A DNA stretch of 63,893 bases, the filler included, from Octopus bimaculoides (Eukaryota), in assembly GCF_001194135.2 (NCBI RefSeq). It is 4 parts of 4 records of this genome, joined end to end, with 100 filler letters (N's around TTAATTAATTAA, not from the genome) between each part and the next. Parts side by side here need not be neighbours in the genome. Positions count along the whole stretch, not along the records: positions 1 to 31,298 come from NC_069001.1; 3 more parts are not named here. The stretch is one strand, 5' to 3'. The position numbers were made by a program, and so were the translations under genes. The notes under the pieces are model-generated. The model saw only the letters and a program-made list of their open reading frames with translations. It made no database searches and was not told the DNA's origin. This document shows, piece after piece, positions 475 through 28,537 of the stretch; position 1 is the stretch's first letter, and every line of letters begins with the position of its first letter.

Positions 475-1700
475 CAGAGCAATTCGCGCAGCTTACTTAC
501 CAGTTGTCTACCAACAACTTGTACACCTCTTTGGAAGGACCATCCTGTCCAGGAGCTTTACCATTGGAAAGTTTTTGATAGCAGTACTTATCTCTTCAAA
601 AGAAGGATCTTCCATTAGTTCTTCAATGATAAGCCACTGAAGAATTTCGTTGATCACTTCAGGATCGGTAGTGGATTCTTGATTTTATACAGATTTAAAG
701 AGTTCAGCACATTTTTCAGAATTTCGTCTTTGCTACTTAAGAGTTTTGACTGTCAAAAGAAAGAACAGGTTCTTTAGTACCTTTTCATGGACCAAACACA
801 CCTTTCAGATTGTCATACAATGCTCTCAAGTTGCGAGGGTCAGCAGCCTGTTATAAATCTTGGTTTTTTTTTCCTCACCGAGAATCTTTCCCTGCACGCA
901 GATTTTTCTGTGCAATGTTTCTAGAGGAGGTGTATCAGGATCTGAGTGTGGGTGAAGTTTAGTCTGAGACCCATGCTTTGTGTCTCTTCTGTATAGTTCC
1001 TACGAGAGCTTTTATTTGAGAATCATTCTCATAGAGCCCATCTTGGTGCTTGCATCTCACGAATTCTAGCGGTTCTTCAACAAATGATTTGATGCTGTCA
1101 CGAATATTGTGCCACAAAACTGTAGGGTCGTTCTTTTCCTTTACATTTTTAAGCTTTGAGTTTAAATACATTTCAAAACTTTTTGTCGCTTCTGGATTTT
1201 TTAAAGAAGTGGCATTCATTCTCGGATGTATACTGGACCTCAATGGCCTCTTTGCATACGGTTCGATTAATAACTTACTGCGAACTATTCCGTGATCCGA
1301 GTAACAATCAGGAGATTTGTGAGTTCTGGTTAATCTGAAATCAGTGCAATCCCTGTTCTTAGTTATATCATAGTCAAGCATGTGCCAGTTACCAGATCGG
1401 GGATGCTTCCATATGTTTTTTGTATTTATCTGCTTACTGAAACACTGTGTGTGATTGTTAAACCAATCGCAAACCTCTTTCATTGATCGTTTCTCTTCCA
1501 TACTTACCTATTACTCCTGACCACAACAATTTTTTGTCATAATTTTTCTTCCTATTCATTGCCCTCTCTTTCTGTTTCTCGTTCCAGCATCTGAAGACAC
1601 CAAAGCTGAGGCGGACATTTTTACAAACAATCCACAATCCGTTATTAGAGGGGGTAAAACCATTTAGCAGTTTGTTCTTTTTGCCTTTCATTTCCTACAA
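475..1700 (-). mobile_element. RTE-clade LINE relic (endonuclease C-terminus, linker, start of RT region)
   Basis: ORF 959..1501 contains WKHPRSGNWHMLDY, DCYSDHGIVRSKL and RCKHQD; the neighbouring frames are broken by stops and frameshifts. Confidence 0.75.
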
Positions 1701-2661: not shown

Positions 2662-3887
2662 GTGAAAAAAATTTCTAAGCCTCGTTTATACAGCAAAAAT
2701 TATTCAAAACTGAGCTTCACATTTTCTGGAAATGAAAACAACCCTAGTTCCCTGTGTTTAGTTTGTAGGGATACACTTGCAAACGAAATTATGGTACTAA
2801 ACAAATTAAAGCCTTATTTCAGCACTAGGCGTAGAAATTTGCCAACAAAACCAGTGGAATACTTCATTGAACTTTCAAAATCTCTAACAAAGCAGGCTTC
2901 ATCGTTCACAAAATGAATGAAGACATCACACAAAGCTCAAGAGGCAAGTTACTTGGTTGCTCAAATAATTGACAAAAACAAGAAACGACATGGTATTGCT
3001 GAAAGTACTACAAAGGAATCTTGCTGTGCTTATTGTTCGAACAATGTTTGGACCTTAAGTTTGAGATAGAAGTTAATTAAATTCCTCAGGCAGATAACAT
3101 AATTGGAAGACGAATTCAAGATATCTGATGATATATTAAGCTGAAAATGAAGGATATTTTTCAAGATGATAACATGATGTTTGCACTGAAGTTAGACGAA
3201 TCAACATATGTCAGTGGGTTAGCACAAGTGGTGGCTTTTATACGTTTCATTTATAATGACAGAATTATTGAGCAATTCTTGTGTTCTCTAGAACTTCCAT
3301 CGAGAAATAGAGGTGAAGACAATTTTCAAGCTTCAAATTCTTCCACGAAGGAGAATAATTAATTTTTATTTCTTTATTGCCCACAGGGGGCTAAATATAG
3401 AGGGGGAAAAACAAGGACAGACAAAGGCATTAAGTCGATTACATCAACCCCCACTGCATAACTGGTACTTATTTAATCGACCCCGAAAGGATGAAAGGCA
3501 AAGTCAACCTTGGCAGAATTTGAATTCAGTACGTAATGGCAGACGAAATACCGCTAAATATTTCGACTGCCGTGCTAACGATTCTGCCAGCTCGGTCCCC
3601 TATGAAGAATAATTAATTATGGCTAAACTGTGTAGGAATATGCACAGATGGCGCACCCTCAATGATAGGTTCAGTAAAAGGTTTTACAACTTCAGCAAAA
3701 AAAAAAAAAGAGAATACAAATATTATAATTACTCATTGTTTTTTTGCATCGTGAATCCCATCTTATGGCCATAGTAGATCATATTCAAATAATTAACGTT
3801 AGGCTTGCATAGAACTTAATTGGTGTGTTGCTAAATTACGTATGTTTAAAAAGTGTGTCACCAACCGGAAGAGTTTGGAAAACACTG
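2662..3887 (+). mobile_element. hAT/Charlie-type (ZBED8/SCAND3-like) transposase relic interrupted by a SINE
   Basis: Motifs LCLVCRDTLANE, ASYLVAQII, FALKLDESTYVSGLAQVVAFIRF, WLNCVGICTDGAPSMIG and THCFLHRE in broken frames. Right TIR gtttggaaaacactg ends at 3887, followed by ttctagat (Charlie NTCTAGAN target consensus). Left TIR not found. Confidence 0.85.
3365..3605 (-). mobile_element. tRNA-derived SINE (family A) with 13-bp TSD
   Basis: Near-identical to 12445-12672; flanked by agaataattaatt at 3352-3364 and 3606-3618. Confidence 0.85.
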
Positions 3888-4073: not shown

Positions 4074-4148
4074 TGGTTGATTTCGCTCGTCTGTATAACA
4101 GTAGTTTTATTTTTCCTTGACCACTGGGCTTGCAATGCCACTGTTGTC

Positions 4149-4201
4149 CTATTCCATGTAGTCATTCGGATAGAGGTATTTTTGTAGTGGCCAAACCAGA
4201 T
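4149..4201 (-). CDS. TEX47: TEX47-like exon 8 (DLVWPLQKYLYPNDYME*)
   Basis: Acceptor ttttacttttcttttccag|AT; TAG stop at 4151-4149; family C-terminal (S)xxVWP motif. Confidence 0.87.
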
Positions 4202-7200
4202 CTGGAAAAGAAAAGTAAAAACAAAAACTGAAACAAACACATTAGCAATAACACGTACTATCATTAAAATTGAGGCTGTAATTGTTTTAGTTTCAACACA
4301 CAGTTTCATGTCAAGTCACTCACCGGGCAGGCACATCTTTTAAATCTCTATTTTGTCTTTTTATTAACAGAGAAATGGTATCCTAGTACCTTTCTGTTTA
4401 AGAACCACTGGGCCAAAACAAATAGCAGCAACAACTTACCAGAATGTAGAACAATATCAAAAGGTTTCGTAAACATGTCTATGAGTTGTTCAATTGTGAG
4501 CCCTTCTTCCTCGTTCTTCAATAAATAATGGATCAGGGCTACAATAGAGAAATGTCTAATTTGTAGTTGTAGTTGTAATGATCATGATGGTATGGATGGT
4601 GGTATGGATGGTGGTAGTGGTGGCAATGGCTAAGAAGGCGGAGGTGATGGTGATACCGTAAGTGACAGTGTTGGAGATGGTAGTGGTGAAGGTGGTAGTG
4701 GTGGCGATAGCAGTGGTGATGGTGGTGATAGAGGCGGTAGTTATGGTGGCGGTGGTGGTGGGGTGATGGCGTGGTGAAAACAGTGATGATGGTCGTGGCA
4801 GTAGTAGTGATAGTGGGCGATGTTGTTGGTGGCAGTGGCTGTGGTGACGGAAATGGTGGTGGTAGTAGCAATGACAATAGAGGTGGTGGTGGTTGTGGTG
4901 GTGGTGGTAGCGCTGATGCTGTTGGTGGTAGTGAGGGTGTTGGTGGTGGTAGCAGTGGAGGTGGTAATGATGGTGGTGGTGGTAGTAGGAGTGATGGCAG
5001 TAAAGGTGGTTGTGGTAGTGGTGGTAATGTTAGTAGTGCTGGAGGGACGAGGTAGTGATGGTGGTGTCAGCATTGTTAGTGCTCTTCCTATTGTTTTATA
5101 ATATGACCGCTTTGATGAAGCAGATCTATGACTAAAAGACATTCCAGCCATCATCCTCCCTCCAGCGTTTTATATGACTCATTATACAGAGTGTATTCCA
5201 CCCCAAAATGTACTCACATTTTGATTTCCCATAACTCATTAAATTTTTCATCTCCTTTCAGATCGAATTGATCCTAATAATGGGAGAAGTATGACTAAAT
5301 TTTAAAGACCGAAAATTTATCATAAAACGCTACTGCAAGCATGAAAACATCATGGAAGTGCAAAGACAATTTAGAAAATATTTCTACAAGGATCCAACAA
5401 TGTGTTGCATCATTGCTTGCATCTGAGACAAGTCTGAATCAGATGGAATTGTGCATGACATCTGTAAATAGCATTCAGAAGGATCACGGTCATCAACTGG
5501 CCCTGCAAAAGAAAAACAATTGCTGGAAACCCTCCACTGATTCCCACAAAAAGCTGTATGACAAATGGGCTGTGGGACAGGAATCCCCAAATCATTCCTA
5601 CTGAAAGCATGAAAACATCATGGAGGTGTAGAGACAATTCAGAAGATATTTTCTTAAAGATCCACTGTTTGCATCCGAAGTAAGTTTGAATTAGATGGAT
5701 ATGTGTATGACATCCACAAGTAGCATTCAGAAGGACCATGGCCATCAATCAACTGCACAGAGGAAAGCAATTGTTGGGAAACCCTCCATCGATCTCCACA
5801 GAAATCTGTATGACAAGTGGGTAATGAGACAGGAATCCCCAAAGCGTTCCTACTGGAAACATGAAACCATCATGGAGGTGTAAAGACACCTCCATGTCCC
5901 TCCATAGTCATCATGTCTTGTAAGCTTCTCTTGCTTGCTCTTCTCACCACTTCTTTCTTTCTCACTCTGTCCCAGTAAGAGATGTCCAGGACTGAATGCA
6001 GGCAGCATTAATGGAACACGACCAGTAACTGAGAGATCTTCGCTGTCTTCTTCCAGATTTCACAGACGTAGACGGCTGTTGGTATAACAATAGATGAGTA
6101 CAGCCACAGCTTCATCTTCTTATTGATGGTCTTGTTAATGTGGCTTGGTGTTTGTGTTTGTTCCCAGCCACCATTTGACGACTGGTGTTGGTTTGTTTAT
6201 GCCCCTGTAACTTAATATTTTGTCAAACGCAAATGATAGAATAAGTACTAGATGTATTAGAACTGAAGTCAATTCTCTCAAAGAAAACTTTTCAATGCAT
6301 TGCCCCAACATGGCCACAGTCAAATGACTGATGCAAATAAAATATACATAAATTCATAGCTGTGTCAATAGTTAGATATCGCTTTAGTATTTCAAATGCT
6401 GTGGAAACAAACGGTCCACCTTTGACCAGGGAAAAGGTTTTGAAGTGTGGGTTTGTTAAGCGGTTTGAGCAGGAATGGGGTGATGCTTGGATCCAATCAA
6501 TGAAGCTTACCTTGTTGGGGAAGTAGTGCTGGGTTTCTTGTGCTCATTGTTTCAAGAACTCTCTGAAAGTCACCCTGCAATGAGAATGGTACTCAGCTTA
6601 TATACGAATGTGTAGTATTCATACTTACATACATACATCCTATTTACATACATACATACATGCATAGATACATACATGCATAGATACATACATACATGCA
6701 CACATGCATACATGCATACATACATACATACATACATACATACATACATACATACATACATACATACGTACGTACGTACATACATACATACATACATCCT
6801 GTATACATAGATACATACATACATACGTACATACATACATACATACATACATACATACATTCATACATACACACACCTCACACACACTGAATACATGTAC
6901 TGAATACATGTGCAGTACTGATTATATGATGTGGTTGTAGAGTCAAGTTTTGACTTCTATTCCTAGCATGGTGGTATCTCGTTGTTATTGGCACTCCGTC
7001 GCTTACGACGTCGAGGGTTCCAGTTGATCCGATCAACGGAACAGCCTGCTCGTGAAATTAACAAAGGAATGACTCACTGACTACGGATCCAGGAAGGGTA
7101 AGTGAGATACTCAGTGAACAATTTAAAAGTGTATTCACTTCCCCACTTGGACACGTGCAGATAAAAATCCGGTTGAATTCTTTGGTATTGCAGGTGTAAA

Positions 7201-7350
7201 AGGGGAAGCGCCACCCATCAATTACATCAACATTGAGGAAACATATTATCAAGATGAGTAAACGAAGAGAACAATATGTGTGTGTGTGTGTGTGAATATG
7301 TATAATATATATATAGACATATATATACATACATATATATAATATGTATG

Positions 7351-7399
<49 letters not shown>

Positions 7400-8006
7400 G
7401 CACTCCGTCGCAGGTTCCAGTTGATCCGATCAACGGAACAGCCTGCTCGTGAAATTAACGTACAAGTGGCTGAACACTCCACAGACACGTGTACCCTTAA
7501 CGTAGTTCTCGGGGAGATTCCGCGTGACACAGTGTGACAAGGCTGACCCTTTGAGTTAAAGGCACAACAGAAAGTTGTGGTGGAAGAGTACAGCAGGGTT
7601 CGCTACCATCCCCCTGCCGGAGCCTCGTAGAGCTTTAAGTGTTTTCGCTCAATAAACACTCACANNNNNNNNNNNNNNNNNNNNNNNNNNNNNNNNNNNN
7701 NNNNNNNNNNNNNNNNNNNNNNNNNNNNNNNNNNNNNNNNNNNNNNNNNNNNNNNNNNNNNNNNNNNNNNNNNNNNNNNNNNNNNNNNNNNNNNNNNNNN
7801 NNNNNNNNNNNNNNNNNNNNNNNNNNNNNNNNNNNNNNNNNNNNNNNNNNNNNNNNNNNNNNNNNNNNNNNNNNNNNNNNNNNNNNNNNNNNNNNNNNNN
7901 NNNNNNNNNNNNNNNNNNNNNNNNNNNNNNNNNNNNNNNNNNNNNNNNNNNNNNNNNNNNNNNNNNNNNNNNNNNNNNNNNNNNNNNNNNNNNNNNNNNN
8001 NNNNNN

Positions 8007-8044
<38 letters not shown>

Positions 8045-11000
8045 GTGCGCGTGTGTGTGTGTATACTAGATAACCTGTAACCTGTTGGGTTACCAATATT
8101 TCAAGGTACTGCGAATCCGTGGAATCTATGGTCCGATTTATGTGAAATCTTTTGTTATTCTGTGAGCATTCACATTTCAGTGTTACCTTACTTGCAAAGC
8201 ATTTTCCCCACTATACACTGGTTTTAGCTATTTATGAAGGTACCCACAAAAAACCATGTGTCTCAGTAATCCGTGGTCTGATTTATGCAAATCTTGTTTT
8301 ATAATGGTCTGTATTCATATGAGCATCCGATTCATGATGTCTCCTGCTTGTGTCTCTTTCTCTTGTTCACCAGATGCTCAGCACTTCAAGTGTCTGATTC
8401 CTGATCCCTTCTGCTTCTCTCTCTCTTTCTCTCTGTTCTACCAGACACTCAGTGGAGGCACAATGGCCCAGTGGTTAGGGCAGCGGACTCGCGGTCATAG
8501 AATCGCGGGTTTCTATTCCCAGACCGGGCGTTGTGAGTGTTTATTGAGCGAAAACACCTAAGAGCTCCACAAGGCTCCGGCAAGGGATGGTGGTGAACCC
8601 TGCTGTACTCTTTCACCACAATTTTCTCTCACTCTTACTTCCTGTTTCTGTTGTGCCTGTAATTCAAAGGGTCAGCGTTGTCACACTGTGTCACATTGAA
8701 TATCACCGAGAACTACGTTAAGGGTACACGTGTCTGTGGAGTGCTCAGCCACTTGCACGTTAATTTCACGAGCAGGCTGTTCTGTTGGTCGAATCAACTG
8801 GAACCCTCGACTTTGTAAGCGACAGAGTGCCAACAACAACCAGACACTCAGCCCTTGTTTTATCAGTCTCATTGACCTTTATATTCACATGCCTGTCCCT
8901 ATCAGAAATTTCTCAGAGTATCATCATCATCATCGTTTAACGTCTGCTTTCCATGCTAGCATGGGTTGGACGATTTGACTGAGGACTGGTGAAACCAGAT
9001 GGCTACACCAGGCTCCAATCTGATTTGGCAGAGTTTCTACAGCTGGATGCCCTTCCTAACGCCAACCACTCCGAGAGTGTAGTGGTTGCTTTTATGTGTC
9101 ACCCGCACGAAGGCCAGTCAGGTGGTACTGGCAACGGCCACGCTCAAAATGGTGTATTTTACGTGCCACCCACACAAGAGCCAGTCCTGGAGCACTGGCA
9201 ATGATCTCGCTCGAAAATCCTACGAAGGCCAGTCAGGCGGTACTGGCAACAGCCAGGCTCAAAACGGTGTATTTTATGTGCCACCTGCACAAGAGCCAGT
9301 CCAGGGGCACTGGCAATGATCTCGCTCGAAAATCCTTACACATGTCACGAGCACAAGTGCCAGAAAGGCGACACTGGGCACAGGTGCCATCCCGATACAA
9401 AACTTACATTTTGATTAAATATTTCTCTATAGTTAGTTAGTAATCAAAAGGTGTATAGATCGCAGCACGGCTTGGATAGTGGCACAACTTGTAATTTTAA
9501 CCCTTCCTAGCGACACACAAATATATATAATTATACATTTGTCTCTCTGTCTATCTGTATGTATGTACAATAACAATGATGACTAAAGTGTATATATTGC
9601 TAGAAAGCAGTTGAGTGCATCGAAAGAAGTTCAACTTACTTTATGTTGTTGGTTCAGGTGGGCTCCCAGAAGAAGGATCTGCTGAATGAGGTCGACTTGC
9701 AGTTTCTCAATAGTATCTAAAGTTTCGAAAACCTCCATGTTCTGAGAATGGATGTCCAGGAGACAGAAATGCATTTGTCTGAATAAGCGGAACACCTTTT
9801 TTTGGCGGTTAAGGGTTAATACCATTGGTTTGTAATTAGCAAAATATATAAAATAATTTTAAAAATATATAAAATGTAAAAAAAAAAACAAAAAAAAAAC
9901 AATTAGCAAAATATATAAAATAATAAAAAAAATATATAAAATGTAAAAAAACAAACAAAAAGAAATTAGCAAAATATATAAAATGATTTTTAAAATGGCA
10001 CCTGTGCTGGTGGCATGTAAAGAAAATAATTCAACCTCTGAACGTCGGACCTCACAGAGGCAAAGTGGCTGAGTACCTTTTGAGCTTTGGGCATGATGGG
10101 AGCAAAGTGACTGAGTCCCTTTCGAGCATTGGGCCTCATGGAAGCAAAGTGACTGAGCTCCTTTCGAGCATTGGGCCCCATGGAGGCAAAGTAGCTGAGT
10201 TCCTTTCGAGCATTGGGCCCATGGAGGCAAAGTGACTGAGTTCCTTTCAAGCGGGCCTCATGCAGGCAAAGTAGTTGAGTTCTGTTCCCTTGATAAAGTT
10301 CTGTATGCATTTTTATTTGTATTTTCTCAATGTGTATGTATGTGTGTGTGTGTGTGTGCGAGCTCGTGTATGCATGTGTGTGTGTGTGGAGAGAGAGGAA
10401 ATTGAGTCAACCTAGAAACTGAACCTGCAATAGCCAGTTATGAAGCTGCTGTACAATGAATTACATATGAAGCATCAATACAAAGGATACATCGTGAGAT
10501 ATAACGAGCAGCTTCACTCGATTAATTAGTTTTCCACCAATGGCAGACTTGAGATGCTGTATTAAGGCTGATATGTATTTCTCCGATGACTGTGAAATGA
10601 TACAAATTACAAAACCTCATTAAAAGGAAGACATAACACGTTTGTAAAGATTGCACTCACTCACGTACACACATACACACACACACACACACACAGAGTA
10701 CTGAAAGGGCAGGAAAGGGCCGATGAAATGACAGGGTGCAGTGGTTTCTATGCTTTCCTTAAGGACACTCACTGAATGAAGCGTTTGCATCTATGTCTTG
10801 ACAATGGAAAACTTCTCAGGGACGCCTTCAGTATCAAGAACGTATTCTTTTATTCTTTTACTTGTTTCAGTCATTTGACTGTGGCCATGCTGGAGTGCTA
10901 AATGTAGCCAAACAAATCGACCCCAGGACTTATTCTTTGTAAGCCTAATACTTATTCTCTTGGTCTCCCTTTGCCAAAGTGCTAAGTTACGGGGATGTAG

Positions 11001-13149
11001 ACACACCAACATCGGTTGTCAAGTAATGGTGGAGGGGATAAACACAGACACACATACATATATATACGATGGGATTCTTTCAGTTTCCATCTACTAAATC
11101 CACTCACAAGGCTTTGGTTGGCCCGAAGCTATAGCAGAAGACACTTGCCCAAGGTGCCATGCAATGGGACTGAACCTGAACCATGTAGTTGGGTAGCAAG
11201 CTTCTTACCACACAGCCACGCCTGTGGAAATGAAATATAAAAACAGATGACCAAGGTGACAGCTCAGTAGAATTATTCTTTTCTACTCTAGGCAGAAGGC
11301 CCAAAGTTTCAGGGGAGGGGGCCAGTCGATTAGATCGACCCCAGTACACAACTAGTACTTAATTTATCGACCCCAAAAGGGTGAAAGGTAAAGTCGACCT
11401 TGACACTTAGTAGAATTATTCAAGCATCAAACAGGGTGCCTTGTAGTATTTCTTTTGGATCTGTTTGTTCTGAGTTTAAATCCTGCCCCATCGCCTAGAA
11501 AACAGTGACATCCCTGTGGGGAGTTTTGAGTAACATAGGCACTGACATGGCTGATTGTGAGTGAAGGCACATGGCTGAGTGGTGAGGGTGTCGGATTCAT
11601 AACCATAAGATTGTGGTTTCAATCCCTGGACCAGGCAACGCATTGTGTTTTTGAGCAAAACACTTCATTTCATGTTGCTCCAGTCCACTCAGTTGGCAAA
11701 AAGGAGTAACCCTATGATGGAATGGCACCATCACCACCATCGCCACCACCACCCTACCACTACTACTACTACCACCATCACCACTACCACTACTGCCACC
11801 AGCACCACCACCACTACCACTACCATCACCACCAGCACTCCCTCTGCAGTCCTCTCCCCCCACCAAAAGAGTCAAGTAGATCAACCTACCTCCAGTACGA
11901 CAAAGAACTGCACCTGGTACATCACGAGGAGACCAGAAATTATCTCCCCTTCTTTTTCTCTTAAATATAGAATATCTTCTTGCAGATGACCTGTTAAGAA
12001 ATATTGACTCATATCAATATATATATGTGTGTGTGTATATATGTGCAGCCACAACAGTATACACACACACACACACACACATATACATATATAATAGGCA
12101 CAGGAGTGGCTGTGTGGTAAGTAGTTTGCTTACCTTGGTAGTAAGATCAGGCTGAAGAAGAGGTATCTGTCAGGAGACAGATTCATGAGAAGATGGAAGC
12201 CTGCGGCCAAGAAGCTGGGAGTGTTTGGCACCAGGTAAGTGGAGGCCAAAAACAAGGGAAAGAAAAAGCAAGGGGTCTACCCTGGTGGTCAGATGCCTAT
12301 CTGTCAGGAAAGTCATTACAAATTGCATCTGTAATGAGCAATGCTTTAATCGAACATTGTAAATATAATCAAATTATTATTGTATATTTAAAATTGTAAA
12401 TATTTAACCGATACAGCTACTTCACCCCTTTTATGTTTGTTATTTCTTTATTGCCCACAAGGGGCTAAACATAGAGGGGACAAACAAGGACAGACAAATG
12501 GATTAAGTCGATTATATCGACCCCCAGTGCATAACTGGTACTTAATTTATCGACCCCGAAAGGATGAAAGGCAAAGTCGACCTCGGCGGAATTTGAACTC
12601 AGAACGTAACGGCAGACGAAATACCGCTGAGCAATTCGCCCGGTGTGCTAACGGTTCTGCCAGCTTGCCTCCTTGAATGTCTGTCTTTTATGTCTGTCTT
12701 TCCTTGTTCGTCCCCTCTTTGTAATGCCTTCATGGCAAATCGTTAATGAAATAAAGTAGCTTGCTTACCAACCACGTGGTAACAAAAGTTCTGTCCATTT
12801 TTTAAGGGTTTAGGAGTCAGCAAACTAATAAAACAATATCTGATTTATTTAATCATTAATATAGTCACCAGCCTTCTCTAAGTGCCCTTTCCATCTGTCG
12901 ATGAGATCTTTAATGCCACAGTCATTACCAATGGTTGAATGCCAACAACGGCATGCATTTGGCAATATTCACAGCTCCTCAACAAGCTCTTGAGATTGGC
13001 TGCGTGCTTCTGGTCAGCATGTCTAAGGAGTTTTCAATTAAAGCCAAGTGTAATAGTTGGCATACAACTGTCAATTACATTCTGATCAATTCTATGCCCT
13101 AACCAGGAATATACTAATATACTGCTCAAGAATATAAATAAATGTGTGT

Positions 13150-13198
<49 letters not shown>

Positions 13199-13999
13199 CA
13201 TTACACGTACACATACTTGTCTTTGATATCACTTCTGACCTTTTGAAATCTCATGATCTAATTCAACATATTGGTAAAAATATCTGTGTAATCAATAAAT
13301 CAATAAAGACAAAATTCTATGACTGTGCAAAGTACAAGATATCGAACACACTTAGCAACTTTCCAATCTCAATAATCACTGGATTAATCGATGAGATTAA
13401 ATAATTCAAACTGTGCTTTCCTGTATTTTCTGCACCCACCCACTTCTTATTCTTTTACTCTTTTATTTGTTTCAGTCGTTTGACTGTGGCCACGCTGGAG
13501 CACCGCCTTTGGTCGAACGAATCGATCGTGGGACTTATTCTTTGTGCAAGCCTAGTACTTATTTTTTATTGGTCTCTTATGCCGAACCACTAAGTAACCA
13601 AGATGTAAACACACCGACATCGGTTGTCAAGTGATGGTGGAGGGACAAACACAGACACACACACAAATATACATACATAAATCCACATATACATACATAC
13701 ATATTTCAAAGATAGAAATTGAAAGAAACCCATTGTATATATATATATATATATATAATATATGACAAGATTCTTTCAGTTTCTGTCTTTGAAATCCACT
13801 CATGAGGCTTTGGTCGGCCCGAGGCTATAGTAGAAGACACTTGCCCAAAGTGCCACACATTGGGACTGAACCCGGAACCATGTGGTTGGGAAGCAAGCTA
13901 CTTACCATACATGCCTGTGCCTTAGATTGTTATTTTTTACTCTTTCTCCTTCTCTTACATACATTCATGCATACATGAATACCCACACATGTGTGTGTG

Positions 14000-14039
<40 letters not shown>

Positions 14040-14049
14040 NNNNNNNNNN

Positions 14050-14097
<48 letters not shown>

Positions 14098-14984
14098 CCA
14101 CCGATTGCATTCTGAAAGGGACACACCCTCTTCATCCAGATGGTGACCCCCTTTGTTCTATGTCAGCATGATATATTATGTGTATGTATGCATGTTGTCT
14201 TTTTAGGAGCAGAAATTTCTAGGAGTGGATTCCCAGTCCCCTCGCTGAGGAAATGGGATACAGAGTGAGGTGGGGGAGTTGTGAAAGGGATGCTGAAAGA
14301 TAAAAGGTTGAGTATGAAAGTGAAAAGAGGTGTGTATGAGGGCATGATTGTGCCGACAATGTTATATGGTGCAGGGATGTGGGGTCTGAGAGAGGCGGAA
14401 AGGAGGCAGCTAGATATATTTGAGATGAGATGTTTGATGGCTACGGTTGGTGTGACAAGGATGGACAGGATAAGGAACGAGGAGGTGCAAAGGAGAGGAG
14501 GAATGAGTGAAATCTAACAACCAGAATGGTTAGATGAATGTTGAGATGGTTTGGCCCACATGGAGAGGATGGATGAGGAGGAGATGGTAAGGAGGGTGAT
14601 GAAGGCAGAAGTGGTAGGCAGCAGAACCAGAGGCAGACCTCAGTTTGTGGGGATGGATGGAGTGAGGAAAGCCTTGGTGGTTAGAGGTGTTGGAGTGAGA
14701 GAGGCAAGAGAGTTTATAAATGATAAGAAAGATTGGAGAGTGCTTGTGGATGGATGAGTGAATTTGATGTTACTCAAAGGGGTACAGAACCAGCATGATA
14801 TGGTGGGGCTAAACCAGCATATGCTGTCAGGCCCCACTGCTGATATCGGGGTTTGTGTTCTGTCCTTTGACCCGAGCCTATGACAGGGCTCGCCTCTTTG
14901 GGCTGGGAAATAAATGGAGCGCCTGGTGTGTGTCTTGTTGTGGCTAACCCCTCCCTGGAGAATAGGCCTGGGTGTATGTGTATA

Positions 14985-15018
<34 letters not shown>

Positions 15019-16186
15019 CATGCATGTATGTGTGTATCTAAACACACACAGATATCTCATAGACTAATAAACTGTCCTCCATTTAGCATTTTTATCTATA
15101 AAGACATTACTAGACACTACTCAATAGTATGGATTAAATCTTGAGAATCTTTAGAATGGTTTCAATCCTTAAAAACTTTGCAAGTCATGTCTACGAAATA
15201 CTTGGTCAAGTATTTTAATGCATCAAATTACATTATTTTGTTTCTAGAGACAAATCTTTAAAGACTTGATTGTGTCTATTTTCTTTTGAGATTTACATAT
15301 ATCATACCTTAGCAATTTGGACCAGCTCCACTAGACGAGGGGAGATAATCACAAGATTCATGTCAATAAAAAGTTTTGAATGGTACAACAATGCACTTAT
15401 AATACAAGAAATGGACTATATACCTGTTGTAATTTAGGTCCAAGGCATGCATTACATTGAATTATATGTTGTTGGTATACTCTGGAGTGCCCGACTAGTT
15501 GTAAATCCCCTTGGTGTATCATGACCAAATGAATACTAACAGATGATGGATAATTGTCAGCTCATTACACATGTTTCTTACACATTTTTTAATGGAGGAA
15601 TGAGAACATTACTCCATTGCAAAAAAAAACAAAACGTGATCATCAGATGAAATGTAATTTTACAAGCAAAAAAATATCTCCAGAATACAGCAGTGACATG
15701 GCTGAGGTCTATTCAGGCTAAATATGAAATGGGAGAATGACCAACAAAGTTGGCCATTGTGGGCATTAGGGGGTGGGCATTAGGGGGTGGGGTTAGGATA
15801 AGAGTATAGTTAGTGAAAGGGTGCATTTGTGATATTTCAGGTCAGCGATCCCGGATGAGATAGGAATTTGCTTGACTGGTTCTCTGGTAGGCCAGGGGTG
15901 GAGTGTAGGTGATGTTTTATTATACTAAGCTTAGAGAAGTTGGTAACTGGGAGAGGACCGAAGAAAATTTAAGGATAAAGAATAAAGAAAAAATAAAGAA
16001 AGCAAGAAGTAAAAAGTAAAAGTCTGTAAAATTACATTTAACTGATAGTTACAAGGTTTTTGTAATGGAATAATCTTATTCTTCTTTTAAAAAATGCCTA
16101 AGAAACAGTTGTAATGAGGTGACAATTATCCATCGTCTGTCATTATTCATTTGATTATATATATATATTCATTTGATTTTACATAT

Positions 16187-16218
<32 letters not shown>

Positions 16219-16732
16219 GGATGGATGGATGGATAGATAGATAGAGAGAAGTAGATAGATAGACAGATAGATAGATAGATAGATGGATAGATAGACAGAT
16301 ATACTTATGCATACACACATGGACATGGACACACACACACACACACACACATATATGTATATACATATACACACATGCAAATCTATGTATGTACATATGT
16401 GTGTGTGTATGTGTGTATACACACACATTTCTATGTATATCTCACTGCCTTCACACACACACATACATCTATTCACAACCAGAAACAAACCTCAAAGACT
16501 TACTGAGAACTACTGATGGTTCGTCTGTTTTGTTCTTTATGTTCCCAATGTAGATCAAACGGTGAACAAGGCTGGCCTGCAACAGAGACAGAGGACGCAT
16601 GAAATCATCACCAGCATCTAAAAATAGGTACAAGGAGGAAATTAGGGGGTGAAATAGAGGGGCTGAACTGCAACAGGGTAAGGGTGACAAGAAGTCACTA
16701 TATTTTTGCTCCATACATACATACATACATAC

Positions 16733-16784
<52 letters not shown>

Positions 16785-17681
16785 GTGTATGTGTTCTTCC
16801 CTGCACCATTGCTTGACAACCAGTGTTGGTGTGTTTATGGGCCTGTAACTTAGCAGTTCAGCAAAAGAGACCGATAGAATAGGTACTAGGCTTACAAAGA
16901 ATAAGTCCTAAGATTGATTTCTTTGACTAAAAAAAAAAACCCTCCAAGGCTAGCCACAATCAACTCCAGCATGGCCACAATCAACTGACAGAAACAAGTG
17001 AAAAAATAAGGTTTGTTTCTGACCCCATAAGTCAGCAGTTCAACAAAAGACTGAGTACCAGACTTATAGAAATATGTCAGTCCTGGGGACGATTTGTTCG
17101 ACTAAAACCCTTCAAGGTGCTGCCCCAGCATGGCCACAGTCCAATGACTGGAACAAGTAAATGATAAGGAAGATTGAGAGAAAAATTCAGTCGTTTGACC
17201 AATCATAAATGTAAATTATTCTTCACACTCAAATTTTNNNNNNNNNNNNNNNNNNNNNNNNNNNNNNNNNNNNNNNNNNNNNNNNNNNNNNNNNNNNNNN
17301 NNNNNNNNNNNNNNNNNNNNNNNNNNNNNNNNNNNNNNNNNNNNNNNNNNNNNNNNNNNNNNNNNNNNNNNNNNNNNNNNNNNNNNNNNNNNNNNNNNNN
17401 NNNNNNNNNNNNNNNNNNNNNNNNNNNNNNNNNNNNNNNNNNNNNNNNNNNNNNNNNNNNNNNNNNNNNNNNNNNNNNNNNNNNNATCGACCCCGAAAGG
17501 ATAAAAAAAAAAAAATCAAAATTCAACCACGGTAGCATTCGAACTCAGAACGTAGGTATCACAAATATATTAATACCCAGCATATGTTTATACTTACACC
17601 TTCTCCAAATCTACTTCTTTCAATATCGTATAAAGAACGCCTGCTTTCTAGATCTGAGATTTCCAATGATGACATCGCCAT
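4149..17681 (-). CDS. TEX47: TEX47/C7orf62-like BLUF-fold protein (DYBLUP/MOT7-related), whole gene span, 8 coding exons, 242 aa
   Basis: Eight exons with GT-AG boundaries and matching phases join into one 729-nt ORF: MAMSSLEISDLESRRSLYDIERSRFGEG|ASLVHRLIYIGNIKNKTDEPSVVLS HLQEDILYLREKEGEIISGLLVMYQVQFFVVLE|SSEKYISALIQHLKSAIGGKLINRVKLLVISHD|VFRLFRQMHFCLLDIHSQNMEVFETLDTIEKLQVDLIQQILLLGAHLNQQHK|GDFQRVLETMSTRNPALLPQQA LIHYLLKNEEEGLTIEQLIDMFTKPFDIVLHSD LVWPLQKYLYPNDYME*. It is colinear with human TEX47 as I recall it (LLDRMFLVAKI; GEAVTGLLLIYP..LHILESS; IVVISHNIPMRLFMQW; NRPIHITLDSEVVWP). No database search was run. Confidence 0.88.
4440..4538 (-). CDS. TEX47: TEX47-like exon 7 (LIHYLLKNEEEGLTIEQLIDMFTKPFDIVLHS)
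   Basis: Acceptor tttctctattgtag|CC; donor TCTG|GTAAGT; 99 nt, phase 1 to 1. Confidence 0.87.
4560..5065. repeat. Degenerate (GGT/GAT)n trinucleotide tract
   Basis: Direct sequence; source of the spurious Thr/Gly/Val/His-rich ORFs. Confidence 0.9.
5187..5885 (+). mobile_element. Tc1/mariner relic (TIR plus N-terminal HTH region) with an internal tandem duplication
   Basis: Starts TA|CAGAGTG. YxKHENIMEVQRQFRxYF is typical of Tc1-like DUF4817 N-termini. The segment repeats at 5340, 5608 and 5860. Confidence 0.65.
5900..6125 (-). mobile_element. LINE (RTE-like) RT C-terminal fragment
   Basis: KLWLYSSIVIPTAVYVCEIWKKT...VFH*CCLHSVLDISYWDRV. Confidence 0.65.
6511..6574 (-). CDS. TEX47: TEX47-like exon 6 (GDFQRVLETMSTRNPALLPQQ)
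   Basis: Acceptor ccattctcattgcag|GGT; donor CAAG|GTAAGC; 64 nt, phase 0 to 1. Confidence 0.85.
6615..6875. repeat. (CATA)n microsatellite
   Basis: Direct sequence. Confidence 0.92.
7390..7663 (-). mobile_element. tRNA-derived SINE (family B), 5' part lost in the gap; further 3' fragment at about 6985-7062
   Basis: Reverse complement of 8540-8838. Confidence 0.8.
8453..8838 (+). mobile_element. Full-length tRNA-derived SINE (family B) with 13-bp TSD
   Basis: A-box-like TGGCCCAGTGG, B-box-like GGTTTCTATTCC, (CAA)n tail; accagacactcag duplicated at 8440-8452 and 8839-8851. Confidence 0.85.
8922..9395 (-). mobile_element. Dispersed retroposon 3' end with (ATG)n tail (family C); other copies at about 24540-24775(+), 25268-25320(+), 25468-25700(-), 38020-38560(-), 42350-42560(+), 50100-50262(+), 50580-50750(-), 53200-53320(+)
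   Basis: Shared core ctacagctggatgcccttcctaacgccaacc / ccaacccatgccagcatggaaa..gacgttaaatgatgatg in all copies; internal duplication of about 115 bp in this copy. Confidence 0.75.
9640..9795 (-). CDS. TEX47: TEX47-like exon 5 (VFRLFRQMHF...LGAHLNQQHK)
   Basis: Follows a U12 branch site and AG; 156 nt open; donor AAA|GTAAGT; overlaps the supplied ORF 9631..9825. Confidence 0.88.
9796..10490 (-). other. U12-type (minor spliceosome) GT-AG intron, intron 4 of the TEX47-like gene, 695 nt
   Basis: 5' splice site GTATCCTTT (10490-10482); branch site CCTTAAC (9814-9808); no polypyrimidine tract; first AG downstream of the branch (9797-9796) keeps the reading frame. Confidence 0.88.
10055..10285. 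repeat. 42-bp minisatellite, about 5.5 copies, inside the U12 intron
   Basis: caaagt starts at 10061, 10103, 10145, 10187, 10229 and 10268; unit ggcaaagtgactgagttcctttcgagcattgggccccatgga. Confidence 0.9.
10491..10589 (-). CDS. TEX47: TEX47-like exon 4 (SSEKYISALIQHLKSAIGGKLINRVKLLVISHD)
   Basis: Acceptor catttcacag|TCA; donor GAT|GTATCCTTT (U12 type); 99 nt, phase 0 to 0. Confidence 0.88.
10848..11224 (-). mobile_element. tRNA/CORE-like SINE (family D) with internal microsatellite
   Basis: Reverse complement of the 58633-59046 copy (GGAGTGGCTGTGTGGTAAG...CCTTGGGCAAGTGTCTT...GCATGGCCACAGTCAAATGACTGAAACAAGTAAAAG). Confidence 0.85.
11890..11990 (-). CDS. TEX47: TEX47-like exon 3 (HLQEDILYLREKEGEIISGLLVMYQVQFFVVLE)
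   Basis: Acceptor tatttcttaacag|GT; donor GAG|GTAGGT; 101 nt, phase 1 to 0; SGLLVMYQVQFFVVLE aligns without gaps to the BLUF TGALFYSQGVFFQWLE segment. Confidence 0.88.
12445..12672 (-). mobile_element. tRNA-derived SINE (family A); partial copies at about 11270-11400, 20750-20900, 32480-32690, 32720-32886
   Basis: Core atcgaccccgaaaggatgaaaggcaaagtcgacctcggcggaatttgaactcagaacg shared between copies. Confidence 0.85.
12860..12950 (-). mobile_element. mariner transposase C-terminal relic
   Basis: GIKDLIDRWKGHLEKAGDYIND* resembles the mariner GIxxLxxRWxKCxxxxGDY terminus. Confidence 0.5.
13452..13922 (-). mobile_element. SINE family D
   Basis: Same consensus as 58633-59046, reverse strand. 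Confidence 0.85.
14230..14970 (+). mobile_element. 5'-truncated RTE-clade LINE (RT C-terminus, 3' UTR, microsatellite tail)
   Basis: IVPTMLYGAGMWGLREAERRQLDIFEMRCL...RIRNEEV...W(F/L)AHMERMDEE...RGRP in ORFs 14281..14517 and 14551..14757. Confidence 0.85.
16504..16576 (-). CDS. TEX47: TEX47-like exon 2 (ASLVHRLIYIGNIKNKTDEPSVVL)
   Basis: Acceptor cctctgtctctgttgcag|GCC; donor CTCA|GTAAGT; 73 nt, phase 0 to 1; carries the BLUF beta1-like RLIY motif. Confidence 0.85.
17598..17681 (-). CDS. TEX47: TEX47-like exon 1 (MAMSSLEISDLESRRSLYDIERSRFGEG)
   Basis: ATG at 17681-17679, 84 nt open, ends GGT|GTAAGT (phase 0). Confidence 0.8.
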
Positions 17682-20206: not shown

Positions 20207-20214
20207 AATCACAA

Positions 20215-20238
20215 ACGATGGTGGGGGAACAAACACAG

Positions 20239-20272
<34 letters not shown>

Positions 20273-20427
20273 ATATGCATGTATATGCGGCGGGCTTCTT
20301 TCAGTTTCCTTCTACCAAATCCACTCACAAGGCTTTGGTCAGCCTGAGGCTATAGTAGAAGACACTTGCTCAAGATGTCACACAATGGGACTGAACCCGG
20401 AACCATGTGGTTGGGAAGCAAGCTACT
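20215..20427 (-). mobile_element. SINE family D, 5' half
   Basis: Consensus match. Confidence 0.8.
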
Positions 20428-21193
20428 TGTATAAAAATTGTTTAAATATTCCGTGTTTTGTGGCCGTATAACCAGTTTCTTGTACATAAACTTTACTTGT
20501 CTGAAATACAGTTCTTTCTTGGTCCCTGAAAAATTACCGTGGACCCCACCAAAACCTTATATGGATCCTAGTTGAAGGCCTCTGGTTTAAACCCACATAT
20601 CAAAATGGATGTATATTCGATGAAAGTTATTAAAATATTCTTCTGTAAAAGGTCCTTCATGAAGATGCGAAAAGCACGAGAAATCATCTAAGGGAGATAA
20701 TCTTTACTGCTATTATATAAAATGTATTTTTCAAATCTTCTCTACCCATAAATAAATCGCTTCAAATTTTGACACAAAAGTCAGGAATTTTGGGGGAGGT
20801 GGTGTGTCGGTTACAACGACCCCAGTACACAGTTGGTACCTCTTTTATCGACCCCAAAAGGATGAAAAGCTAAGACAACCTCGGCCGGATTTGAACTTGC
20901 TGTAATTTATCTCCAGGAGACATCATCTCCAACTGGCTATAACGACACGATCTGTGTCCTTATATTTTTGAACAAGGGCATTTAGCACCCCCACTCAGCT
21001 CAAAATAATATCTGTGTGTATTGCGATTTCCAGTTTATTTTCCTTCATCAGCGTGGAATAATTTTTCGGCTCGAGGCGGCACTGCCAAATTCCTGTTCAA
21101 AACATAGTTTTCAAAGTGACAACTAGTCACTGATCTATACAATAAAAAATCACTATTTGTAAATCTCTCAACGAGAGAAATTCAGCAACACTA

Positions 21194-21357
21194 CCCTAGA
21201 GCAAAGATTATTTGCCAACATAACATGGCAGTCCTGGTTTAGGACTATATCGTGTCATATAGCTAGCTGGAGACGGTCTCCAGGGGCTAAATTACAGCAA
21301 CATTCATCCTAAACCAGGACTGCCATGTTAAGTTGGCAAATAATCTTTACTCTGGGG
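21194..21357. mobile_element. MITE-like element with about 50-bp terminal inverted repeats
   Basis: agagcaaagattatttgccaacataacatggcagtcctggtttagga (21198-21244) vs reverse complement of 21307-21353, 2 mismatches. Confidence 0.8.
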
Positions 21358-21465
21358 CTTAGATTTATTCAAGGTGATGCTCCAGCATAGCCACAGTCTA
21401 ATGAATGTAACATGTAAAATATAAAACATTTGTAATATTGTTTTTACCCTTTTTTTTTGTTGAAG

Positions 21466-21566
21466 GGTTTTATCAAAGACGCATGGTGAAAAGAAATCTT
21501 GGGTCTGCATGAGTAACATGTTTATCAAAATGCCAGAAAAATCTACAAAGTCAATTTTAGAAAAAG
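21466..21566 (+). CDS. PDRG1: PDRG1 (p53 and DNA damage-regulated 1, prefoldin-like) internal exon: VLSKTHGEKKSWVCMSNMFIKMPEKSTKSILEK
   Basis: Acceptor ttttttttgttgaag|G; donor AAAG|GTAGGT; 101 nt, phase 2 to 1; VCMSNMFIKMP resembles PDRG1 VCFGNMFIKMP. Confidence 0.88.
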
Positions 21567-22336
21567 GTAGGTCCACACCATTTTTTTTGTTCTTTTCTTT
21601 TATTTTCTTTTCCTTTTATCTGTAGTCATTAACCCCTGGAGTTCTTGACAGAATATATGCAGTTAGGTTTGAACTTACAAACTGTATAATCCTGCCATCC
21701 TAGAATGATTTTGCTATTGGAAACCAATTGTAAAATCTCTACCAAAGAAAACAAATTTCTGCTTGTCTCAGTCTGCCTGGCTGACAAGCAAGTCCACACC
21801 ACAGTCAGAAGTTTCACAGTGACCAAAAGGATGAATATCCAAATTTTAAAACTATTGCTCTGACAAAATTATCCCACAATGGGTTCTTTTATATAGGTGG
21901 TTGACTTGCTAGAGATGACAGCTAAATCTCTCTCAACCTACCATCCACTTACTATTACTACAACAACAAAAGTGTGGATTGTACCATTTGACTGCCTACA
22001 CACATTTCATAGGTTCGTTTAGGGCTATGTGAAGACTACACTATCAAAGACTGCTCTATGTACCATAGTTCTGCTGGTTTAGAGCTGACGTAGTGTTAAA
22101 TAGCAACAGCATGTAACCCATTTATGATGTGTTCACATGGGAAAGCTAATGTCGAACTATAAACTATACATGCTAATAAACACTAGAAGTTTGGTGTGTG
22201 TGTATGTGTGTGATGCAAGTGCTGGAAATAGTGACATCAGTGTTTGTAAGTTCAAACAGTATTACTAACATTTGCTTGGTAATACAACCATAGGGCAAAA
22301 ATGTATCAGTCTATTTGGCAGTTATTCACCTGCTTT

Positions 22337-22610
22337 GTTAATGTGACGGACATTGACAAAGGGCATTGGTTAGTCACTAGCTATGTCAATATGACAGACA
22401 TTGACAAATAGCACCACCGACTCACCAGTTATGTCAATATGACTGACATTGATAAACAGCATCAGTTATTTACCAGTTCTGTCAAATATGTTTGACATTT
22501 ATAAAGAGCATTAGTTACTCATTAGCTATGTCAATATGACAGACATTGACTAAGGACATCAGTTACCAACTACGGTCAATATGACAGACATTGATAAAGA
22601 GCATCAATCC
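22337..22610. repeat. 48-bp minisatellite (about 6 copies) with a palindromic core, in a PDRG1 intron
   Basis: gtcaat starts at 22385, 22433, 22481, 22530 and 22575; core GTCAAT-atgacagac-ATTGAC. Confidence 0.85.
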
Positions 22611-23454: not shown

Positions 23455-23672
23455 TGTGTGATCGTGGTGCTGTGGTAAGAAGCTCGTTTCCTAACCATAC
23501 GGTTTCAGGTTCAATTTCATTGCATAGCATCTTGGGCTAATTTCTTTTACTATAGCCCTGGGTCGACTAATGCCTTCTGGGTGGATTGGATGTGGTAGAC
23601 AGGAACTGAAAGAAGCCTTACACATGCACAAATATATATCATATATACTCACACATACATATATATCTATTT

Positions 23673-23707
<35 letters not shown>

Positions 23708-28504: not shown

Positions 28505-28537
<33 letters not shown>

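What the first reader, a model, noticed from the sequence alone, without database searches (positions are those of the whole stretch)
4149..17681. Hidden 8-exon BLUF-fold (TEX47/DYBLUP-like) gene, almost invisible in the ORF track
Seen: eight short exons spread over 13.5 kb of repeats splice in phase into a 242-aa ORF. Known: BLUF is a flavin blue-light sensor fold. As I recall, a dynein-associated BLUF protein (DYBLUP in Ciona sperm, MOT7 in Chlamydomonas) binds the tether of inner-arm dynein f/I1, and TEX47 is its likely vertebrate relative. Inference: this is the cephalopod orthologue, a candidate axonemal or sperm flagellar regulator.
Basis: partly seen in the sequence, partly recalled or inferred. 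Interest (0 to 1): 0.75.

Follow-up and report, generated by a model that had tools for sequence, protein, structure and literature searches.

The report
Octopus TEX47 (BLUF-fold) gene, already annotated
The eight short exons are real and encode the octopus copy of TEX47/DYBLUP, a small BLUF-fold protein of the sperm-tail dynein tether, but public databases already annotate this gene under that name, so it is a correct rediscovery rather than a new find.

Summary
On the minus strand, eight GT-AG exons (17681-17598, 16576-16504, 11990-11890, 10589-10491, 9795-9640, 6574-6511, 4538-4440, 4201-4149) join in phase into a 729-nt, 242-aa ORF. The three assembly gaps all lie in introns. The gap-free O. 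vulgaris and O. sinensis loci carry the same eight exons, so no exon is hidden in a gap.

- Pfam TEX47 scores 127 bits against a cut-off of 25.
- The protein matches bovine sperm TEX47 (9fqr) and Chlamydomonas MOT7 (8glv) over its full length.
- The predicted fold is the β-α-β-β-α-β-β of BLUF. Foldseek and a family profile both reach genuine BLUF photoreceptors.
- dN/dS of 0.12 against O. vulgaris points to a gene under purifying selection.

The gene is not new. The protein is letter-for-letter XP_014779514.1, [quoted passage not shown] (UniProt A0A0L8GP58, "BLUF domain-containing protein").

One small twist: octopods keep the BLUF tyrosine but have Val, Met and Phe where BLUF photoreceptors have Gln, Trp and Met. 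Most TEX47 relatives have His and Trp at the first two of those positions. A structural or regulatory tether role is therefore more likely than canonical blue-light sensing. Expression and function were not tested.

The parts
17598..17681 (-). Exon 1 (84 nt): ATG and codons 1-28 (MAMSSLEISDLESRRSLYDIERSRFGEG). Donor GTAAGT.
   Evidence: 95% nucleotide identity to O. vulgaris/O. sinensis exon 1.
16504..16576 (-). Exon 2 (73 nt): β1 strand 'LVHRLIYIGNI', carrying the BLUF-type Tyr37. Acceptor ...ctgttgcag, donor GTAAGT.
16577..16600 (-). Alternative start. The ATG at 16600-16598 reads through the exon-2 acceptor (MRPLSLLQ|ASLVHRL...) and gives the 222-aa RefSeq isoform X2.
   Evidence: The sequence compared with P0198 = XP_014779515.1.
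11890..11990 (-). Exon 3 (101 nt): helix α1, β2 and β3 (...LQEDILYLREKEGEIISGLLVMYQVQFFVVLE). Holds the family-invariant G72 and E86, and V83 at the BLUF Gln position.
   Evidence: I missed it at first and found it through the orthologue alignment.
10491..10589 (-). Exon 4 (99 nt): α2 and β4 (SSEKYISALIQHLKSAIGGKLINRVKLLVISHD).
9640..9795 (-). Exon 5 (156 nt, the longest): β5 (FRLFRQMHF, with M127 and F129 at the BLUF Trp and Met positions) and the first C-terminal helix. The acceptor is weak-looking (aaaaaaag); the donor is GTAAGT.
   Evidence: 97% identity to O. vulgaris.
6511..6574 (-). Exon 6 (64 nt): GDFQRVLETMSTRNPALLPQQ.
   Evidence: 98% identity.
4440..4538 (-). Exon 7 (99 nt): LIHYLLKNEEEGLTIEQLIDMFTKPFDIVLHS.
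   Evidence: 99% identity.
4149..4201 (-). Exon 8 (53 nt): DLVWPLQKYLYPNDYME plus TAG. Contains the near-invariant family motif W229-P230.
4106..4111 (-). AATAAA hexamer 38 nt after the stop codon; a candidate poly(A) signal, not verified.
17238..17485 (.). Assembly gap inside intron 1.
14040..14049 (.). Assembly gap inside intron 2, within a (CA)n microsatellite.
7665..8006 (.). Assembly gap inside intron 5.

Best explanation
This is the Octopus bimaculoides orthologue of TEX47 / DYBLUP / MOT7 (RefSeq LOC106875768). It is an intact 8-exon gene under purifying selection and encodes a 242-aa protein.

Shown here: the N-terminal part (about residues 31-131) adopts the BLUF (βαββαββ) fold. A helical C-terminal part follows and ends in the conserved 'LVWP' motif.

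Inferred from orthology with the solved bovine-sperm and Chlamydomonas axonemes: the protein sits in the tether/tetherhead complex (CFAP43/CFAP44) that anchors the two-headed inner dynein arm f/I1 to the doublet microtubule. There it contacts the fβ heavy chain. It would so help set dynein-f activity and flagellar waveform, most likely in sperm.

Inferred from the residues: of the four BLUF photocycle residues only the Tyr is kept (Gln→Val83, Trp→Met127, Met→Phe129). I therefore expect it to act as a structural or allosteric adaptor rather than as a canonical flavin blue-light switch.
For: - Gene structure and exact identity to XP_014779514.1 'testis-expressed protein 47 isoform X1 [Octopus bimaculoides]' and A0A0L8GP58 'BLUF domain-containing protein'. 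The window equals GCA_001194135.2 CM046621.1.
- The same 8 exons occur in O. vulgaris and O. sinensis. There are 21 synonymous and 10 non-synonymous differences, giving dN/dS 0.12.
- Pfam TEX47 at 127 bits.
- Full-length sequence matches to 9fqr_H0 and 8glv_D9. With a family profile these reach E 9e-74 and 2e-58.
- Predicted structure with pLDDT 72 and pTM 0.73 and BLUF topology.
- Foldseek gives 8glv_D9 at E 6e-12, 9fqr_H0 at E 2e-11 (target-normalised TM-score 0.84, rmsd 2.6 Å), 9y6s_7M, and then more than 40 BLUF photoreceptor chains.
- Family-invariant G72 and E86 and near-invariant R34, R122, W229 and P230 are all present.
- Role of the family: PMC7909887, PMC10266980, PMC11779644.
- Pocket residues: alignment to bPAC and counts over 116 family members.
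Against: - No expression, localisation or biochemical data for the octopus protein were available. The junctions are supported by cross-species conservation and by the RefSeq model, not by reads that I could inspect.
- The structure was predicted for the O. vulgaris orthologue (9 substitutions), because the tool refuses spliced sequences. The last 25 residues are modelled with low confidence.
- TEX47 is absent from human respiratory cilia but present in bovine sperm, so its tissue in octopus is a guess.
- MOT7 itself has His at the Gln position, binds flavins only weakly, and still gives a blue-light phenotype. Loss of the canonical residues therefore does not strictly exclude some light or redox response.
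Confidence: 0.85

Rival explanations
1. It is a working blue-light (flavin) photoreceptor that makes octopus sperm or ciliary dynein-f light-responsive, as proposed for DYBLUP in Ciona and MOT7 in Chlamydomonas.
For: BLUF fold and homology. The photoactive Tyr is kept (Y37). The mot7 mutant has a blue-light acclimation phenotype (PMC7909887).
Against: The Gln that is central to the BLUF photocycle in established knowledge of AppA and PixD is Val here. The Trp and Met of β5 are Met and Phe. Pfam BLUF is far below threshold (13.8 against 25 bits). Even MOT7 binds flavin only weakly, and its authors doubt that flavin is the intrinsic ligand. Octopus sperm are transferred in spermatophores and stored internally, which is general knowledge and makes light an unlikely cue.
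Confidence: 0.1
2. It is a decaying or unexpressed gene copy (pseudogene) that merely retains an open frame.
For: Some splice sites look weak: the exon 5 acceptor is aaaaaaag and the exon 4 donor is gtatcc. No transcript contigs for this species were in the collection.
Against: The 242-codon frame is intact and all introns are GT-AG. dN/dS is 0.12 against O. vulgaris at dS of about 0.15. Every family-invariant residue is kept. The same weak-looking sites are conserved as ag/gt in two other species. Argonauta keeps a 244-aa orthologue.
Confidence: 0.03
3. The exon chain is a chance concatenation of short open segments in repeat-rich DNA.
For: Chance look-alikes do exist in this window. I first built a 9-exon model using two spurious 'exons' (16097-16043 and 15560-15526) that spliced in phase and still scored 91.6 bits to Pfam TEX47.
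Against: The final model is identical to a RefSeq protein. It raises the Pfam score to 127 bits over the full profile. Every exon is conserved at 94-99% in two other octopus genomes.
Confidence: 0.01

Closest known systems
Octopus bimaculoides LOC106875768, XP_014779514.1 'testis-expressed protein 47 isoform X1' / UniProt A0A0L8GP58 'BLUF domain-containing protein'
   Same: Identical 242-aa sequence. Same assembly and coordinates: CM046621.1, gene span 13,533 bp.
   Different: Nothing. This is the same gene.
Mammalian TEX47 (C7orf62), e.g. bovine sperm axoneme chain 9fqr_H0
   Same: Same Pfam family. Colinear over residues 19-231 (E 6e-14). Predicted fold superposes at target-normalised TM-score 0.84 and rmsd 2.6 Å. 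Shared motifs: HR-hydrophobic β1, TGLL, LE, RLF, VWP.
   Different: About 25% identity. Mammals have Leu at the BLUF Tyr position, and His and Trp where octopus has Val83 and Met127. The octopus protein has a 10-residue C-terminal extension (KYLYPNDYME).
Chlamydomonas MOT7 (8glv_D9) / Ciona DYBLUP
   Same: Full-length homology (E 3e-6 with the single sequence, 2e-58 with the family profile). Best Foldseek hit. BLUF Tyr conserved.
   Different: About 22% identity. MOT7 reaches the Pfam BLUF threshold in precomputed annotation (PF04940 listed for P0054); the octopus protein does not. MOT7 has His and Trp at the pocket positions.
Bacterial and euglenid BLUF photoreceptors (AppA, PixD/Slr1694, TePixD, BlrB, BlrP1, bPAC, OaPAC)
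   Same: Same βαββαββ fold and detectable profile homology: bPAC E 2e-10, Slr1694 6e-5, AppA about 3e-3. Tyr on β1 is conserved.
   Different: The photocycle Gln, the β5 Trp and Met, and the α1 Asn residues are not conserved. There is an extra roughly 110-residue helical C-terminal domain with the VWP motif. There is no effector domain. In its relatives the protein works as a subunit of an axonemal complex.
Leishmania LAX28 (the T/TH-associated homologue); chain 9y6s_7M, deposited as 'Tudor domain-containing protein'
   Same: Third-best structural hit (E 1e-10) and family-profile hit (E 2e-16) over the full length.
   Different: Much more divergent, and reported to lack a recognisable BLUF domain. 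Equating 9y6s_7M with LAX28 is my inference and was not checked.

Membership tests
TEX47 / DYBLUP / MOT7 family (Pfam PF24787) | Scores above the Pfam gathering threshold over the whole profile | tested here: met
   127.1 bits against a cut-off of 25, E 8.6e-37, profile positions 1-192 of 192.
TEX47 / DYBLUP / MOT7 family (Pfam PF24787) | Full-length colinear similarity to experimentally placed members (bovine TEX47, Chlamydomonas MOT7) | tested here: met
   9fqr_H0 at E 6e-14 (residues 19-231 against 33-248). 8glv_D9 at E 3.4e-6 (13-232 against 13-233). Foldseek ranks them 1 and 2.
TEX47 / DYBLUP / MOT7 family (Pfam PF24787) | Family-conserved residues: R on β1, TG-LL, LE, R-x-F on β5, C-terminal VWP | tested here: met
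   R34, G72, E86, R122, W229 and P230 are all present.
TEX47 / DYBLUP / MOT7 family (Pfam PF24787) | Physical subunit of the inner-arm dynein f/I1 tether/tetherhead complex in the axoneme | not testable with these tools
   Known for MOT7 and bovine TEX47. No octopus axoneme data.
TEX47 / DYBLUP / MOT7 family (Pfam PF24787) | Expression in testis, sperm or other flagellated cells | not testable with these tools
   No RNA-seq mapping tool was available, and no transcript contig of this species is in the collection.
BLUF domain (Pfam PF04940), fold level | β1α1β2β3α2β4β5 ferredoxin-like fold superposable on solved BLUF domains | tested here: met
   AF2 model of the 96%-identical orthologue: strands 33-41, 71-76, 80-87, 108-118 and 127-131; helices 48-66 and 89-102. 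Foldseek probability 1.00 to BlrP1, bPAC, AppA, TePixD, Slr1694 and BlrB, with E from 2e-7 to 1e-4.
BLUF domain (Pfam PF04940), fold level | Sequence-level homology to BLUF domains | tested here: inconclusive
   The single sequence is below the Pfam threshold (13.8 bits, cut-off 25, E 0.067). A 43-member family profile does hit bPAC at E 2e-10 and Slr1694 at 6e-5.
BLUF photoreceptor (functional class) | Photocycle residues: Tyr (AppA Y21), Gln (Q63), and Trp/Met on β5 (W104/M106) | tested here: not met
   Tyr is present (Y37). Gln→Val83, Trp→Met127, Met→Phe129, from the alignment to bPAC. Among 116 relatives these positions are mostly His (80) and Trp (84). Only the four octopod sequences have Met at the Trp position.
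BLUF photoreceptor (functional class) | Binds FAD or FMN and shows a light-induced red shift | not testable with these tools
   Needs purified protein. Even MOT7 binds only weakly.

The most novel reading that the evidence does not exclude
Octopods have remodelled the ligand pocket of the dynein-tether BLUF protein. Both Val83 (for the His/Gln found elsewhere) and Met127 (for the near-universal Trp) are shared by Octopus and Argonauta, and Met127 is unique to them among 116 relatives. This lineage's TEX47 would then have lost, or changed, whatever small-molecule (flavin-derivative, redox) sensing the family performs, while keeping its structural place in the axoneme. That would make it a natural 'ligand-dead' comparator for testing whether DYBLUP/TEX47 needs a cofactor at all.
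Probability: 0.35. Interest if true: 0.35.

Novelty: already known. Interest (0 to 1): 0.15.

Why it matters
For the scan, it shows that the first-stage reader can recover a fully correct 8-exon gene model and its family from raw repeat-rich sequence. The biology is already in RefSeq, UniProt and Pfam, so there is no discovery to claim.

For the field, TEX47/DYBLUP is a little-studied subunit at the centre of the dynein-f tether complex, and its cofactor and signal are unresolved. The octopod sequences add a data point: Tyr is kept, but the pocket His/Gln and Trp are replaced. This could help decide whether ligand binding matters for the protein's axonemal role.

Tried and rejected
1. The first hand-built model was wrong. 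Guided partly by my recollection of the human TEX47 sequence, I took 16097-16043 ('AFFKRRIRLFHYKNLVTI') and 15560-15526 or 15560-15424 ('DNYPSSVSIHL...') as exons 3 and 4, and used a shorter exon 2 (16576-16514). This gave 9-exon models of 235 or 269 aa. They spliced in phase, and the short one scored 91.6 bits to Pfam TEX47. Alignment to the O. vulgaris and Argonauta proteins then showed that the true exon 3 is at 11990-11890 and that exon 2 ends at 16504. The 'YPSS' resemblance was chance.
2. The search for homologous proteins with a 101-aa partial concatenation found nothing.
4. The search of protein representatives and structure prediction do not accept a spliced protein. I used the O. vulgaris orthologue P0001 (96% identical) instead.
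5. A literature search for TEX47 together with octopus or cephalopod was badly posed and returned only octopus papers without TEX47. No conclusion can be drawn from it.
6. Pfam scans of five other ORFs in the window (959-1501 minus strand; 14281-14517, 2662-2916, 3147-3362 and 29410-29619 plus strand) gave nothing significant.
Full report
**What is there.** The finding's end coordinates point to a minus-strand gene. The reverse complement of 17681-17679 is ATG, followed by an open frame that ends at a GTAAGT donor. The reverse complement of 4151-4149 is TAG, preceded by an acceptor ...ttttccag.

My first attempt was partly wrong. Leaning on a recollected human TEX47 sequence, I accepted two in-phase look-alike segments (16097-16043 and 15560-15526) and a shortened exon 2, which gave a 9-exon, 235-aa model. 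That model already scored 91.6 bits against Pfam TEX47 and matched PDB chain 9fqr_H0, 'Testis expressed 47'. Searching the protein collection with it returned two octopod proteins of 242 and 244 aa. Their alignment showed that the segment between exon 2 and the 'SSEKY' exon was different. The real exon lies at 11990-11890, inside an ORF that I had overlooked in the stop-to-stop list.

**The corrected model.** The exons are:
- 17681-17598
- 16576-16504
- 11990-11890
- 10589-10491
- 9795-9640
- 6574-6511
- 4538-4440
- 4201-4149

Their lengths are 84, 73, 101, 99, 156, 64, 99 and 53 nt. They sum to 729 nt, or 242 codons plus a stop. Phases are consistent and every intron is GT...AG. This is exactly the '8 exons, 242 aa, 4149-17681' of the finding.

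**Gaps.** The N runs at 17238-17485, 14040-14049 and 7665-8006 lie in introns 1, 2 and 5, and no exon border touches them. The orthologous loci of O. sinensis (L001) and O. vulgaris (L002) have no N within the gene. They contain the same eight exons, in the same order and with the same lengths, with ag/gt borders. So the frame is continuous across the gaps and no exon is hidden in them.

**More than chance, and a live gene.**
- Exon nucleotide identity to O. vulgaris is 94-99%. Flanking intron blocks align at about 80-90% where they align at all.
- The CDS differs at 31 of 729 positions, 21 synonymous and 10 non-synonymous. This gives dS of about 0.15, dN of about 0.018 and dN/dS of 0.12.
- Together with the intact frame and retention of all family-invariant residues, this argues against a pseudogene.

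**Identity.**
- The translation is present letter for letter in the public collection. It is XP_014779514.1 'testis-expressed protein 47 isoform X1 [Octopus bimaculoides]', also UniProt A0A0L8GP58 'BLUF domain-containing protein'.
- The gene's record is GCA_001194135.2 CM046621.1. Its span of 13,533 bp equals 4149-17681, and the 27,681 overlapping bases are identical to the window.
- A second RefSeq isoform (X2, 222 aa) starts at an ATG at 16600 and reads through the exon-2 acceptor.
- The gene, its name and its BLUF assignment are therefore already public.

**Family.**
- Pfam PF24787 (TEX47) matches at 127.1 bits (cut-off 25) over the entire profile.
- phmmer against PDB sequences gives bovine sperm TEX47 (9fqr_H0) at E 6e-14 and the Chlamydomonas 'Inner-arm dynein f/I1 light chain' (8glv_D9) at E 3e-6, both nearly end to end.
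- An exhaustive HMMER scan with the O. vulgaris orthologue finds 112 representatives at E ≤ 1e-3, almost all 200-290 aa long and matched over their full length.
- A word-indexed profile search returns mammalian proteins named TEX47, and volvocine-alga proteins named BLUF domain-containing or, for Chlamydomonas, inner-arm dynein f/I1.

**Fold.** The tools refuse spliced sequences, so I predicted the structure of the O. vulgaris orthologue, which is 233/242 identical, from a 31-sequence alignment.
- Quality: mean pLDDT 72, pTM 0.73.
- Topology: β(33-41) α(48-66) β(71-76) β(80-87) α(89-102) β(108-118) β(127-131), followed by four helices. The last 25 residues have low confidence.
- Foldseek against the PDB ranks MOT7 (8glv_D9, E 6e-12) first and bovine TEX47 (9fqr_H0, E 2e-11, target-normalised TM-score 0.84, rmsd 2.6 Å) second. 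A Leishmania doublet chain (9y6s_7M) is third.
- A long run of genuine BLUF photoreceptors follows: BlrP1, bPAC, AppA, TePixD, Slr1694, BlrB and BlsA, with E from 2e-7 to 1e-4.
- Independently, a profile of 43 family members hits bPAC at E 2e-10, OaPAC at about 6e-7 and Slr1694 at 6e-5 by sequence.
- The single octopus sequence is sub-threshold for Pfam BLUF (13.8 bits).
- The 'BLUF fold' claim therefore holds.

**Photoreceptor or not.** The alignment to bPAC places octopus Y37 on the photoactive Tyr. It places V83 on the essential Gln, M127 on the β5 Trp and F129 on the β5 Met. Across 116 aligned relatives the residues at these positions are as follows:

| BLUF position | Octopus residue | Across 116 relatives |
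|---|---|---|
| Tyr | Y37 | Tyr in 41 |
| Gln | V83 | His in 80, Gln in 4, Val in 7 |
| Trp (β5) | M127 | Trp in 84; Met only in the four octopod sequences |

The family as a whole is not a canonical Tyr-Gln BLUF, and octopods have diverged further in the pocket. The published work is itself cautious:
- MOT7 binds FAD and FMN only weakly, and its authors doubt that flavin is the intrinsic ligand (PMC7909887).
- No cofactor could be seen in the axoneme map (PMC10266980).

**Likely mechanism (inferred from orthology).**
- In Chlamydomonas, MOT7 sits at the centre of the FAP43/FAP44 stellate tether/tetherhead complex.
- It links that complex to the I1 β motor, and its loss hyperphosphorylates IC138 and alters blue-light acclimation.
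- In bovine sperm, TEX47 is a sperm-specific T/TH subunit that contacts the fβ linker. It is absent from human airway cilia.

By orthology, the octopus protein is most likely the same small adaptor in sperm flagella, tuning dynein-f. I rate light sensing as unlikely. Nothing about expression or localisation in octopus could be tested here.

**Verdict.** Both the observation and the interpretation are correct, but the gene is already annotated under that very name. It is of low interest as a discovery. The only mildly new point is the octopod-specific replacement of two strongly conserved pocket residues.

Noticed in passing
window 4149-17681 compared with L002 10001-40704 and L001 10001-45833: The same gene spans 13.5 kb in O. 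bimaculoides but 30.7 kb in O. vulgaris and 35.8 kb in O. sinensis. Every intron is shorter in the window; intron 4, for example, is 695 bp against 10.7 kb. This could reflect real repeat gain or loss, or repeats collapsed or lost at the three gaps of the older assembly.
   Followed up: partly
window 10845-11224, 13454-13911, 16760-16931, 20212-20428, 23471-23973, 28371-28729: A dispersed repeat of about 200-450 bp (SINE-like) has many copies in the window, and each copy matches 10-20 places in the 50-kb O. vulgaris locus at 70-90% identity. Several copies give the recurring pseudo-ORF motif '[16 protein letters not shown]'.
   Followed up: partly
window 15526-15560 and 16043-16097, minus strand: Two intronic segments flanked by AG and GT splice in phase and mimic TEX47 sequence ('DNYPSSVSIHL' against mammalian 'YPTSILHIL'). 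They fooled my first model, which still passed the Pfam threshold. They are absent from the orthologues' CDS, so they are chance look-alikes.
   Followed up: yes
window 16577-16600, minus strand: An in-frame ATG 24 nt upstream of exon 2, inside intron 1, is used by RefSeq isoform X2 (222 aa). That isoform lacks the 28 N-terminal residues but keeps the whole BLUF fold.
   Followed up: partly
window 4540-5170: A simple-sequence block lies in intron 6 just upstream of exon 7. It translates as long Thr/Pro/His or Gly/Val runs in several frames and produces the largest ORFs of the region (up to 175 codons). The local GC skew is +0.41. These ORFs are artefacts, not genes.
   Followed up: no
window from about 20604 to beyond 27681, plus strand (L003 1-7077, minus strand): The divergently oriented neighbour gene is called with a 101-aa product and no Pfam hit in O. 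bimaculoides. At the same relative position O. vulgaris and O. sinensis have a 127-aa product with a weak Prefoldin_2 hit. Conserved blocks lie at window 21335-22606 (88-91% identity to O. vulgaris).
   Followed up: partly
window 959-1501 (minus strand), 14281-14757 (plus strand), 5850-6200 (minus strand): These ORF fragments look like remnants of retrotransposon (LINE-type) proteins, e.g. '...VYEGMIVPTMLYGAGMWGL...'. That reading rests on my own recollection. The two I scanned gave no Pfam hit at E ≤ 0.1.
   Followed up: partly
protein P0089 (Logan assemblies, 243 aa): This is the closest relative outside Octopus and Argonauta (37% identity, E 3e-45; 9 contigs, the longest 1,284 bp). It keeps both the BLUF Tyr and the BLUF Gln ('HFIQILE') but has Val at the Trp position. 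Its taxon is unknown.
   Followed up: no
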